Shown: piece after piece, positions 36,271 through 36,396 of the stretch
Position numbering within the stretch: the first letter of the stretch is position 1
How the letters are laid out: each line of letters opens with the position of its first letter
NCBI RefSeq assembly: GCF_001194135.2
Contig: NC_068984.1
Location: 120,516,647-120,575,865, forward strand
DNA: 59,219 nt
Direction of reading: 5' to 3'
DNA from: Octopus bimaculoides
Lineage: Eukaryota
Program-made: the position numbers and the translations under genes
Notes under the pieces: generated by a model
What the model saw: only the letters and a program-made list of their open reading frames with translations
Told to the model about the DNA's origin: nothing
Database searches by the model: none

Positions 36271-36396
36271 ATTTCATCGCAAAACGTTCTTGGAAAGGAA
36301 GTTGAATCAAACGTTGGTTGTATTAGTGACGAAGACCACCAAGCTGTTGGTGGTATTGCATCATCTCCTCCTCCTCCTTCTTCTTCACTACCACAG
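36271..36396 (+). CDS. MAPT: Candidate degenerate-repeat cassette exon (ISSQNVLGKEVESNVGCISDEDHQAVGGIASSPPPPSSSLPQ)
   Basis: Acceptor ttggttctctacag|, donor CAG|GTAACA, 126 nt = 42 open codons, phase 0/0. VESNVGC..D..H..GG aligns with VxSKVGSxDNxxHxPGG. Confidence 0.7.

What the first reader, a model, noticed from the sequence alone, without database searches (positions are those of the whole stretch)
36271..36396. Hidden degenerate eighth repeat exon: acidic, KxGS replaced by NVGC, with a polyproline tail
Seen: an in-frame phase 0/0 exon with good splice sites, absent from the ORF track on this frame. It keeps the repeat skeleton (I..Q...K.VES.VG...D..H..GG) but loses the lysines, replaces the phospho-acceptor Ser with Cys (the only Cys in the repeat region), loses PGGG and adds SSPPPPSSS. 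Established: KxGS serines are MARK-family sites and tau cysteines form disulfides. Inference: a repurposed module, such as a non-binding spacer, redox site or SH3/WW-type ligand, placed before R'.
Basis: partly seen in the sequence, partly recalled or inferred. Interest (0 to 1): 0.7.

Follow-up and report, generated by a model that had tools for sequence, protein, structure and literature searches.

The report
Acidic degenerate repeat exon, octopus tau
This is a genuine coding exon of the octopus tau-like microtubule-binding gene, an old, decayed, charge-reversed copy of the tubulin-binding repeat shared by octopuses, argonaut and cuttlefish, but it is already in public gene models, so it is real and mildly interesting rather than hidden or new.

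Summary
Window 36271-36396 (+) is a 126-nt, phase 0/0 exon (ctctacag|ATT...CAG|gtaaca) encoding ISSQNVLGKEVESNVGCISDEDHQAVGGIASSPPPPSSSLPQ, between the seventh canonical repeat exon (32918-33007) and the terminal R' exon (54617-54685).

It is not hidden. So do models from O. vulgaris and Argonauta hians and a spliced cuttlefish mRNA contig. Frame, AG/GT sites and length (a multiple of three) are conserved in four genomes, so it is not a pseudo-exon.

Repeat ancestry is supported by an in-register profile test (z=4.4, p=0.0005). Pfam does not detect it and local tests are marginal.

Acidity is conserved (net -3 to -6, against +1 to +4 for true repeats). The tubulin-contact residues are lost, and amino-acid constraint is much weaker than in the real repeats.

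The cysteine is octopod-only (serine in cuttlefish). The polyproline is missing in Argonauta and fits no SH3/WW consensus. The redox and ligand ideas are therefore unsupported.

Best reading: a disordered acidic spacer or affinity tuner that does not bind microtubules. A possible RNA stem over the donor site is an untested side lead.

The parts
36257..36270 (+). Pyrimidine-rich tract and AG acceptor (ttggttctctacag) of the exon
   Evidence: The last 30 intron bases are identical between a second Octopus species and Argonauta; O. bimaculoides differs from them at one base. Cuttlefish has tctatttag.
36271..36396 (+). The exon: 126 nt, phase 0/0, 42 aa. Penultimate coding exon of the O. bimaculoides tau/MAP2/MAP4-family gene (LOC106878541).
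   Evidence: present in UniProt A0A0L8G8F3 and RefSeq XP_014783263.2. (ortholog in a spliced cuttlefish mRNA contig). (Argonauta and O. vulgaris models).
36310..36321 (+). Codons for N-V-G-C, the position of KxGS in true repeats
   Evidence: Octopods have N[VM]GC. Cuttlefish has D-I-E-S in the gapless alignment, so Ser sits at the Cys position. No species has KxGS.
36334..36357 (+). Most conserved core, D-H-Q-A-V-G-G-I. It corresponds to the xHxPGGGx end of a repeat.
   Evidence: The 24 nt are identical between octopus and cuttlefish. Q-A-V-G-G is invariant in all five species. His is Arg in Argonauta.
36336..36353 (+). Perfect 7-bp hairpin CCACCAA-GCTG-TTGGTGG inside the core
   Evidence: (I14). 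It is present in all four species. The Argonauta A>G change turns one pair into G-U.
36358..36396 (+). Ser/Pro-rich tail ASSPPPPSSSLPQ (PPPP = 36367-36378)
   Evidence: In-frame 12-nt length differences occur here. Argonauta has DTASSSSLPQ (no PPPP). Cuttlefish has TTPSPPPSQ.
36397..36402 (+). Donor gtaaca
   Evidence: CAG|gtaaca in the three octopods and CAG|gtaaaa in cuttlefish.
36305..36409 (+). Possible extended RNA stem pairing the exon middle (36305-36335) with the exon 3' end plus donor (36379-36409)
   Evidence: (I1). MFE -28.3 kcal/mol. z is -3.1 to -3.7 in three octopods and -1.2 in cuttlefish. No net covariation. 4.7% of random windows do as well.
36203..36667 (+). Block conserved with Argonauta, extending 68 nt upstream and about 270 nt downstream of the exon
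   Evidence: 470-nt HSP, 72.6%. Most other exons of the gene align with 50 nt of flank or less. Only the R5 and R6 exons have comparable flanks.
32918..33007 (+). Upstream partner exon R7 (IEDQKLEWKAGSKVGSKDNLKHVPGGGEIK), the last canonical repeat
   Evidence: Pfam PF00418 E=1.6e-14.
54617..54688 (+). Downstream partner: terminal coding exon R' (VENQVLKFKENAEPRTNTGINKS) plus stop codon
   Evidence: The protein ends ...KS* in octopus, argonaut and cuttlefish.

Best explanation
**What it is.** Window 36271-36396 is the penultimate coding exon of the Octopus bimaculoides tau/MAP2/MAP4-family gene. It is spliced 33007|36271 and 36396|54617. Every public model or transcript I could find includes it.

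**Origin.** It most likely arose as a duplicate of a 30-residue repeat exon before octopods and cuttlefish split, and then decayed. It kept the exon phase, the I..Q start, a Lys at position 9, the Ser and hydrophobic residue that precede the KxGS glycine, and an H/R-x-A-V-G-G end.

**What it lost.** These residues dock a canonical repeat on the tubulin inter-dimer site:
- the Lys of KxGS (now N or D)
- the KxGS Ser (Cys in octopods)
- the invariant Asn
- the Lys before the His (now Asp)
- the Pro of PGGG

Its charge flipped from +1..+4 to -3..-6.

**How it most likely works (inferred).** It does not sit on the microtubule lattice. It acts as a flexible, acidic, Ser/Pro-rich linker that separates the repeat array from R'. 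It would lower or tune local microtubule affinity electrostatically. That could happen by repulsion from the acidic tubulin surface or by folding back on neighbouring basic repeats. A conserved Ser followed by an acidic cluster (SDED/SEED/SDIE) could make the charge adjustable by acidophilic kinases.

**Shown:** exon reality, conservation, in-register repeat similarity, charge reversal, relaxed amino-acid constraint.
**Inferred:** non-binding, spacer or tuner role, phospho-tuning.
For: **Exon reality**
- It is present with these junctions in UniProt A0A0L8G8F3 and RefSeq XP_014783263.2.
- It is present in the O. vulgaris model and the Argonauta hians model.
- The cuttlefish genomic exon (L002:241-354) is found 114/114 in the spliced mRNA contig L001:1179-1292, between the R7 and R' orthologs.
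- Splice sites, frame and length (a multiple of three) hold in four genomes. Only the annotated frame is open in all four.

**Repeat ancestry**
- Global in-register profile test with column shuffles: z=4.36, p=0.0005. R' against the repeats gives z=3.14.
- hhalign aligns residues 10-29 without gaps to the repeat core of cephalopod repeats (P=0.02). It aligns residues 10-28 to the equivalent core of human R4 (P=0.065).

**Charge.** Net -3 to -6 and pI 4.1-4.6 in five species, against +1 to +4 for the O. bimaculoides repeats.

**Contact residues.** Ser258/Ser262, Lys259, Ile260 and Asn265 are described as contact or structural residues in 10.1101/267153.

**Relaxed protein constraint**
- dN/dS is 0.7-1.2, against 0.02-0.07 for the canonical repeats.
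- Excess change at codon positions 1+2: Fisher p=0.02, 1e-4 and 0.002.

**Disorder.** AlphaFold2 gives pLDDT 49 and no secondary structure. This is weak evidence because the alignment is shallow.

**Motifs.** A CK2-type S-x-x-[DE] occurs in all species. No KxGS occurs in any.
Against: - Pfam PF00418 finds nothing in the exon at E<=10, although it hits the six neighbouring repeats included in the query.
- An HMM of cephalopod repeats scores it 0-1 bit. Shuffle p is 0.04-0.07, and 0.3-0.66 for Argonauta.
- No DNA-level similarity to other repeat exons or their flanks remains.
- I designed the in-register test after reading the claim.
- The flat substitution pattern across codon positions (identity 0.66-0.86 at all three) and the conserved intron flanks suggest that part of the conservation acts on the nucleotide sequence, not the peptide.
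- There are no binding, expression-level or proteomic data.
- I could not examine squid, Vampyroteuthis or Nautilus.
Confidence: 0.6

Rival explanations
1. **Regulated cassette exon.** The main conserved information is in the RNA. A stem pairs the exon middle with the exon 3' end and the donor site (ACAG|GUAA), capped by a 7-bp hairpin. It limits access of the splicing machinery to the donor site. Exon inclusion, and so the R7-R' spacing and charge, could then be tuned by tissue or stage. This would resemble the stem-loop at the human MAPT exon 10 donor.
For: - Substitution is flat across codon positions, with a trend to fewer synonymous changes than in other exons of the gene (pS 0.16 against 0.31-0.65 for Obi-Ahi).
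- A 470-nt block including intron flanks is conserved with Argonauta. The only comparable flanks belong to R5 and R6, which the O. vulgaris model lacks.
- The 91-nt segment 36312-36402 folds at -28.3 kcal/mol with z of -3.1 to -3.7 in three octopods. This is the lowest z of the nine donor windows tested in this gene.
- The donor has C at +5.
- The exon length is a multiple of three.
- The gene has other cassette exons (10800-10859 and about 15533-15582).
Against: - All five models or transcripts include the exon, and I found no skipping isoform.
- RNAalifold gives no net covariation (+0.25). It finds two compensated and six broken pairs in cuttlefish.
- Cuttlefish does not fold this way (z=-1.2).
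- 4.7% of random 91-nt windows reach z<=-3.
- The 200-nt context has z=-0.26.
- I chose the segment after seeing the stem.
- The third-position trend is not significant (p=0.10-0.31).
Confidence: 0.2
2. **Gained-function peptide module.** The exon provides a redox-sensitive or disulfide-forming cysteine. Alternatively it provides a proline-rich SH3/WW docking site or a proline-directed phospho-site between the repeats and R'.
For: - The Cys is conserved in four octopod sequences (O. bimaculoides, O. vulgaris, a second Octopus, Argonauta) and is the only Cys of the repeat region.
- Octopus and cuttlefish carry PxxP and [ST]P.
Against: - Cuttlefish has Ser at the Cys position and no Cys in the exon.
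- Argonauta has no PPPP, PxxP or [ST]P.
- No class I/II SH3, WW I-III or EVH1 consensus occurs in any species, and no basic residue flanks the prolines.
- The Cys is not at the position of human tau Cys291.
Confidence: 0.08
3. **Not a repeat derivative.** The exon is an unrelated insertion, for example exonised intron sequence. Its resemblance to the repeat comes from chance plus a short G-G and V-G content.
For: - Pfam gives no hit.
- The repeat HMM scores it about 0 bits.
- hhalign probability is 2.4%.
- No DNA similarity to the repeat exons remains.
- The His is not invariant (Arg in Argonauta).
Against: - The in-register global test gives p=0.0005, and p<=0.005 for each species alone.
- Independent profiles place it in the same register.
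- It has the same phase 0/0 and lies inside a tandem array of repeat exons that demonstrably duplicates (R5/R6 are 80% identical over 464 nt).
Confidence: 0.2
4. **Dead pseudo-exon or annotation artefact.** The sequence is not really spliced into mRNA.
For: The gene models by themselves are predictions.
Against: - A spliced cuttlefish mRNA contig carries the orthologous exon exactly between the R7 and R' orthologs. The genomic copy is bounded by AG and GT.
- Frame and splice sites are conserved across octopods and cuttlefish.
Confidence: 0.02

Closest known systems
Tau/MAP2/MAP4 tubulin-binding repeat (Pfam PF00418)
   Same: - It lies in the same gene, in series with seven canonical repeat exons.
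- It has the same exon phase.
- Its first 29 residues align in register with the 30-residue unit: the I..Q start, Lys9, Ser + hydrophobic + Gly at the KxGS site, and the H..GG end.
   Different: - The Pfam model gives no match.
- KxGS, the invariant Asn and PGGG are all lost.
- Net charge is -3 to -6 instead of positive.
- There is a 9-13-residue Ser/Pro tail.
- dN/dS is about 1, against 0.02-0.07.
Tau pseudo-repeat R' (the degenerate unit after the last repeat, human residues about 369-399)
   Same: - It is a decayed repeat unit at the C-terminal end of the array that standard repeat models do not detect.
- Its in-register similarity to the repeats is of the same order (z=4.4, against 3.1 for octopus R').
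   Different: - R' has its own ortholog here, the terminal exon at 54617-54685. This exon is an extra unit inserted before it.
- In octopods R' is about neutral and contributes to microtubule binding in vertebrates (own knowledge). This unit is strongly acidic.
- It resembles the canonical repeats more than R' (p=0.0005 against 0.035).
Human MAPT exon 10 (alternatively spliced repeat exon with a regulatory stem-loop at its donor site; PMC2483273, PMC13606898)
   Same: - It is a repeat-derived exon of a tau-family gene.
- In octopods its donor site is predicted to lie in a stable stem.
   Different: - Exon 10 encodes a fully functional repeat and is demonstrably alternative.
- No skipped isoform was found here, and the stem lacks covariation support and is not predicted in cuttlefish.
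- The two are not orthologous exons.
Acidic disordered inserts of tau (N-terminal exons 2/3; Big-tau exon 4a, PMC12896622)
   Same: It is an acidic, disordered segment whose composition is better conserved than its residue sequence.
   Different: - Those inserts lie in the projection domain and are not repeat-derived.
- This one is short and sits inside the microtubule-binding region, between the last repeat and R'.

Membership tests
Tau/MAP2/MAP4 tubulin-binding repeat (PF00418), for the exon itself | Match to the Pfam repeat model at or above the gathering score | tested here: not met
   There are no families at E<=10 for the 42-aa peptide. In the concatenated protein six stretches match (R2-R7) and none covers the exon.
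Tau/MAP2/MAP4 tubulin-binding repeat (PF00418), for the exon itself | KxGS motif (Lys, hydrophobic, Gly, Ser) | tested here: not met
   The motif is N[VM]GC in octopods and D-I-E-S (or S-V-G-S if shifted) in cuttlefish. K.GS is absent in all species.
Tau/MAP2/MAP4 tubulin-binding repeat (PF00418), for the exon itself | PGGG motif and the conserved Asn between KxGS and His | tested here: not met
   AVGG is invariant in place of PGGG. The Asn position is D, E or S.
Tau/MAP2/MAP4 tubulin-binding repeat (PF00418), for the exon itself | Net basic charge | tested here: not met
   Net charge is -3 to -6, against +1 to +4.
Tau/MAP2/MAP4 tubulin-binding repeat (PF00418), for the exon itself | Binds the tubulin inter-dimer site | not testable with these tools
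   This needs co-sedimentation, TIRF or NMR with recombinant protein.
Degenerate (pseudo-) repeat of the tau family, R'-like | Contiguous with the repeat array, same exon phase, and in-register similarity to the repeat above chance | tested here: met
   (phase 0/0, position). (z=4.36, p=0.0005; each species alone p<=0.005). (same register).
Tau/MAP2/MAP4 family, for the host gene | Tandem PF00418 repeats followed by an R'-like C-terminus | tested here: met
   (E=2.7e-75, six stretches). (named tau or MAP4-like by NCBI). PMC8985376 gives the locus as LOC106878541.
Alternatively spliced cassette exon | Transcripts both with and without the exon | tested here: inconclusive
   All five models or transcripts include it. 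The protein word index missed known members, so absence of a skipped form is weak evidence.
Alternatively spliced cassette exon | Length a multiple of three, and conserved flanking intron sequence | tested here: met
   Lengths are 126/126/114/114 nt. A 470-nt block is conserved with Argonauta.
MAPT exon-10-type donor-site stem-loop | A stable, evolutionarily supported RNA stem that includes the donor site | tested here: inconclusive
   z is -3.1 to -3.7 in three octopods. There is no net covariation, the stem is not predicted in cuttlefish, and 4.7% of background windows do as well.
SH3 / WW / EVH1 proline-rich ligand | Consensus motif ([RK]xxPxxP, PxxPx[RK], PPxY, PPLP, PPR, [FWYL]PPPP) conserved among orthologs | tested here: not met
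   No motif occurs in any species, and Argonauta lacks even PxxP.

The most novel reading that the evidence does not exclude
In octopods the 3' half of this exon and its donor site form a conserved RNA stem (36305-36409) capped by the CCACCAA/TTGGTGG hairpin. The stem would control inclusion of the acidic unit, a convergent counterpart of the human MAPT exon 10 donor stem-loop. The same duplex might also be an A-to-I editing substrate. The one substitution inside the hairpin is A>G in Argonauta, turning His (CAC) into Arg (CGC).
Probability: 0.12. Interest if true: 0.6.

Novelty: new variant of a known kind. Interest (0 to 1): 0.3.

Why it matters
The exon is already in RefSeq and UniProt models, so nothing new is added to the gene catalogue.

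What appears undescribed is its nature. No paper among those I could search describes it; the one that treats this octopus gene (PMC8985376) only counts binding repeats. It is a charge-reversed, decayed tubulin-binding repeat kept for the whole coleoid radiation, between the last true repeat and R'.

If it is a built-in acidic spacer or tuner, it offers a natural experiment on two questions. The first is how spacing and charge between repeats and R' set microtubule affinity in tau-family proteins. The second is what becomes of surplus repeats in molluscs, whose MAPs have unusually many.

The value is modest and mostly comparative. It would rise if the donor-site RNA stem proved regulatory.

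Tried and rejected
**Homology tests that gave little**
- Pfam scan of the exon peptide: no hit.
- HMM of cephalopod repeats with residue shuffles: scores near 0 bits and marginal p. Local scoring is too insensitive for a 30-residue decayed unit (an earlier run failed on an option clash).
- DNA similarity between the exon region and the other repeat exons and flanks: only low-complexity chance hits.

**Leads I dropped**
- Gastropod homolog (tail of the Candidula model...VSDHGAVSS): hhalign P=0.16.
- Homology to the vertebrate R' 'TDHGAEIV...SP' stretch, recalled from memory. hhalign chose the canonical R4 core instead, and similarity to cephalopod R' is weaker than to the repeats.
- Overlapping antisense gene. 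The antisense frame is open in O. bimaculoides and cuttlefish but has stops in the second Octopus and Argonauta.
- Conserved read-through ORF downstream of the donor. It stops early in the second Octopus.
- Known RNA families: none in the whole window.
- The conserved intronic element at 43987-44151: no conserved ORF and no significant fold.

**Weak or failed searches**
- AlphaFold2 of R7+exon+R': uniformly low confidence. This fits disorder but does not discriminate.
- The word-indexed protein searches missed proteins that contain exact stretches of the query (against 26 and 28). I therefore do not treat the absence of squid or skipped-isoform hits as evidence.
- Papers naming SRR9970008 or SRR11869391: none. 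The cuttlefish mRNA is assigned to Acanthosepion esculentum or a very close relative. That rests only on 114/114 identity with the genomic contig from ERR12945500.

Full report
**1. What is at the coordinates.**
- The window is AT-rich eukaryotic DNA with assembly gaps.
- At 36271-36396 on the + strand the sequence reads ctctacag|ATT TCA ... CCA CAG|gtaaca. It translates to ISSQNVLGKEVESNVGCISDEDHQAVGGIASSPPPPSSSLPQ.
- It lies in a tandem series of tau-type repeat exons: R1 9031-9140, R2 17133-17217, R3 18383-18495, R4 25183-25272, R5 27148-27237, R6 28240-28329 and R7 32918-33007.
- The terminal exon at 54617-54685 follows, encoding VENQVLKFKENAEPRTNTGINKS then a stop.
- R4-R7 and the candidate are all phase 0/0.
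- The frame has no ATG/GTG/TTG before 36403.

**2. It is a real exon, and it is already annotated.**
- A profile of the exon plus R' retrieved UniProt A0A0L8G8F3 (Octopus bimaculoides, 97 aa). This is exactly MY + R7 + the exon + R'.
- Its 90% cluster also holds RefSeq XP_014783263.2, 'microtubule-associated protein tau [Octopus bimaculoides]', 364 aa. That protein carries the exon with the same junctions.
- The window is therefore O. bimaculoides. PMC8985376 gives the locus as LOC106878541 and notes that the UniProt entries are fragments of one gene.
- The O. vulgaris model contains IPSQNVLGKEVDSNVGCISDEDHQAVGGIASSPPPPSSSLPQ (NCBI name 'titin-like', 752 aa). The Argonauta hians model contains ILSQKSHGKEVESNMGCISEEDRQAVGGDTASSSSLPQ (GAB1598187.1, 793 aa). 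Both place the unit at the same position.
- Direct transcript evidence comes from cuttlefish. A 2.6-kb Logan contig (L001, SRR9970008) encodes a 365-aa protein with ...GGGVIK|IDSQITEEKEVKSDIESVGSDDHQAVGGITTPSPPPSQ|VESQRLNF....
- The same 114 nt occur in a genomic contig bounded by tctatttag| and |gtaaaa (L002, from ERR12945500). That run holds Acanthosepion esculentum short reads according to 10.1101/2025.04.22.649952.

**3. Conservation.**
- The AG acceptor, the GT donor, the frame and a length that is a multiple of three (126, 126, 114, 114 nt) are kept in four genomes. These are O. bimaculoides, a second Octopus (L004), Argonauta (L003:41657-41770) and cuttlefish.
- Only the annotated frame is open in all four.
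- Invariant residues are I1, S3, Q4, K9-E-V, S13, D22, Q-A-V-G-G and the final Q.
- The Cys is octopod-only. Cuttlefish has Ser at that position.
- The His is Arg in Argonauta.
- PPPP is absent in Argonauta.

**4. Is it a decayed repeat?**
- Local methods say little:
  - Pfam gives no hit.
  - A repeat HMM scores 0-1 bit, with shuffle p of 0.04-0.07, or 0.3-0.66 for Argonauta.
  - hhalign gives P=0.02.
  - No DNA-level similarity remains.
- The exon boundaries define a register, so I tested that register directly.
  - I ran a global profile alignment of residues 1-29 (three lineages) against the 30-residue repeat profile.
  - The observed score was 13.2, against -16.2 +/- 6.7 for column shuffles (z=4.36, p=0.0005).
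  - Each species alone gave p<=0.005.
  - The accepted pseudo-repeat R' gives z=3.14 against the repeats. The exon against R' gives only z=2.1.
- hhalign picks the same register against cephalopod repeats and against human R4.
- I conclude that repeat ancestry is probable (about 0.75) but not proven.

**5. What changed.**
- In the microtubule-bound tau model (10.1101/267153):
  - Ser258 and Ser262 hydrogen-bond alpha-tubulin Glu434.
  - Lys259 faces an acidic patch.
  - Ile260 fills a hydrophobic pocket.
  - Asn265 stabilises a turn.
  - Cys291 of R2 occupies the Ile260 position.
- Mapped in register, the exon keeps the first Ser (S13) and the hydrophobic residue (V/M/I15).
- It replaces the Lys with N or D, and the second Ser with Cys in octopods.
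- It replaces the Asn with D, E or S, and the Lys before the His with Asp.
- PGGG becomes AVGG.
- Net charge is -3 to -6 (pI 4.1-4.6) in five species, against +1 to +4 for the O. bimaculoides repeats.
- The octopod Cys is therefore not the counterpart of that tau cysteine.
- No SH3, WW or EVH1 consensus is present in any species.
- A Ser followed by an acidic cluster (SDED, SEED, SDIE) is present in all.

**6. Mode of evolution.**
- Canonical repeats show classic purifying selection. dN/dS is 0.02-0.07. Identity is 0.87-0.96 at codon positions 1 and 2, against 0.47-0.68 at position 3.
- The exon is flat, with identity 0.66-0.86 at all three positions and dN/dS of 0.7-1.2.
- The excess of changes at positions 1+2 is significant (p=0.02, 1e-4, 0.002).
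- The trend to fewer third-position changes is not significant (p=0.10-0.31).
- With Argonauta, the exon sits in a 470-nt conserved block reaching about 270 nt into the downstream intron. Most other exons align with 50 nt of flank or less.
- The peptide is thus loosely constrained: composition, frame and a short core. Some constraint may act on the RNA.

**7. RNA side lead.**
- The conserved core contains a perfect 7-bp hairpin (36336-36353).
- In octopods the exon middle can pair with the exon 3' end and the donor site.
- The 91-nt segment folds at -28.3 kcal/mol with z of -3.1 to -3.7 in three octopods. This is the lowest z of nine donor windows in the gene.
- The support is weak:
  - Cuttlefish gives z=-1.2.
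  - RNAalifold finds no net covariation.
  - 4.7% of random windows do as well.
  - I chose the segment after seeing the stem.
- The resemblance to the MAPT exon 10 donor stem-loop (PMC2483273) is a lead, not a finding.

**8. Verdict.**
- The exon is real, conserved across coleoids and probably a decayed repeat.
- It is best read as a disordered acidic spacer or affinity tuner that does not dock on tubulin.
- The redox and SH3/WW ideas fail the conservation test, and the exon is not hidden.
- It is a new variant of a known kind only in description. Interest is modest.

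Noticed in passing
window 9129/9140, 17133-17217, 18383: R1 has two in-frame-compatible donors: CCTG|gtgggg at 9129 (phase 1) and AAT|gtaagt at 9140 (phase 0). R2 starts in phase 0 and ends in phase 1. R3 starts in phase 1 with GGGN repeated. So 9140>R2>18383 and 9129>18383 (skipping R2) both read ...HTPGGGNI.... This is a possible built-in way to drop one repeat.
   Followed up: no
window 10800-10859 and about 15533-15582: Two small basic exons (SKTSGKTGRSKDSPRKKKAK / VPVNKFRPDMGSGFHNQ) lie between R1 and R2. 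They are present in RefSeq XP_014783263.2 but absent from the O. vulgaris and Argonauta models and the cuttlefish mRNA. The first is conserved in Argonauta DNA. They are likely cassette exons.
   Followed up: partly
window 27000-27600 and 28100-28700: R5 and R6 are a recent tandem duplication: 80% identity over 464 nt, including intron flanks. Both have about 290 nt of downstream flank conserved with Argonauta. The O. vulgaris model goes straight from R4 to R7.
   Followed up: partly
window 43987-44151 and 48892-48969: Two blocks inside the 18-kb intron between the exon and R' are conserved with Argonauta (81% over 165 nt; 77.5% over 80 nt). For the first block I found no conserved ORF and no significant fold; the second I only translated in the window. 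Neither matches an Rfam family.
   Followed up: partly
window 36338; L003 about 41724: The only substitution inside the conserved hairpin is A>G in Argonauta (CAC His > CGC Arg). It keeps the pair as G-U and is the kind of change that A-to-I recoding would mimic. The cuttlefish mRNA and genomic contigs are identical across the exon, so there is no sign of editing there.
   Followed up: partly
window 4911-4955, 6168-6242, gap 7348-7846: The RefSeq model starts at an odd first exon (MFYNIIYSVKVTCDLLTKADEVLRS, 6168-6242). The O. vulgaris and Argonauta models instead have a long N-terminal domain of about 500 aa. One of its exons (DQLYDQMEYDENER) is in the window at 4911-4955. The following exon (…RKRYGINARNETYRPGGGN…) was not found in the window and may fall in the assembly gap. 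The O. bimaculoides model looks N-terminally truncated, or it may use an alternative promoter.
   Followed up: partly
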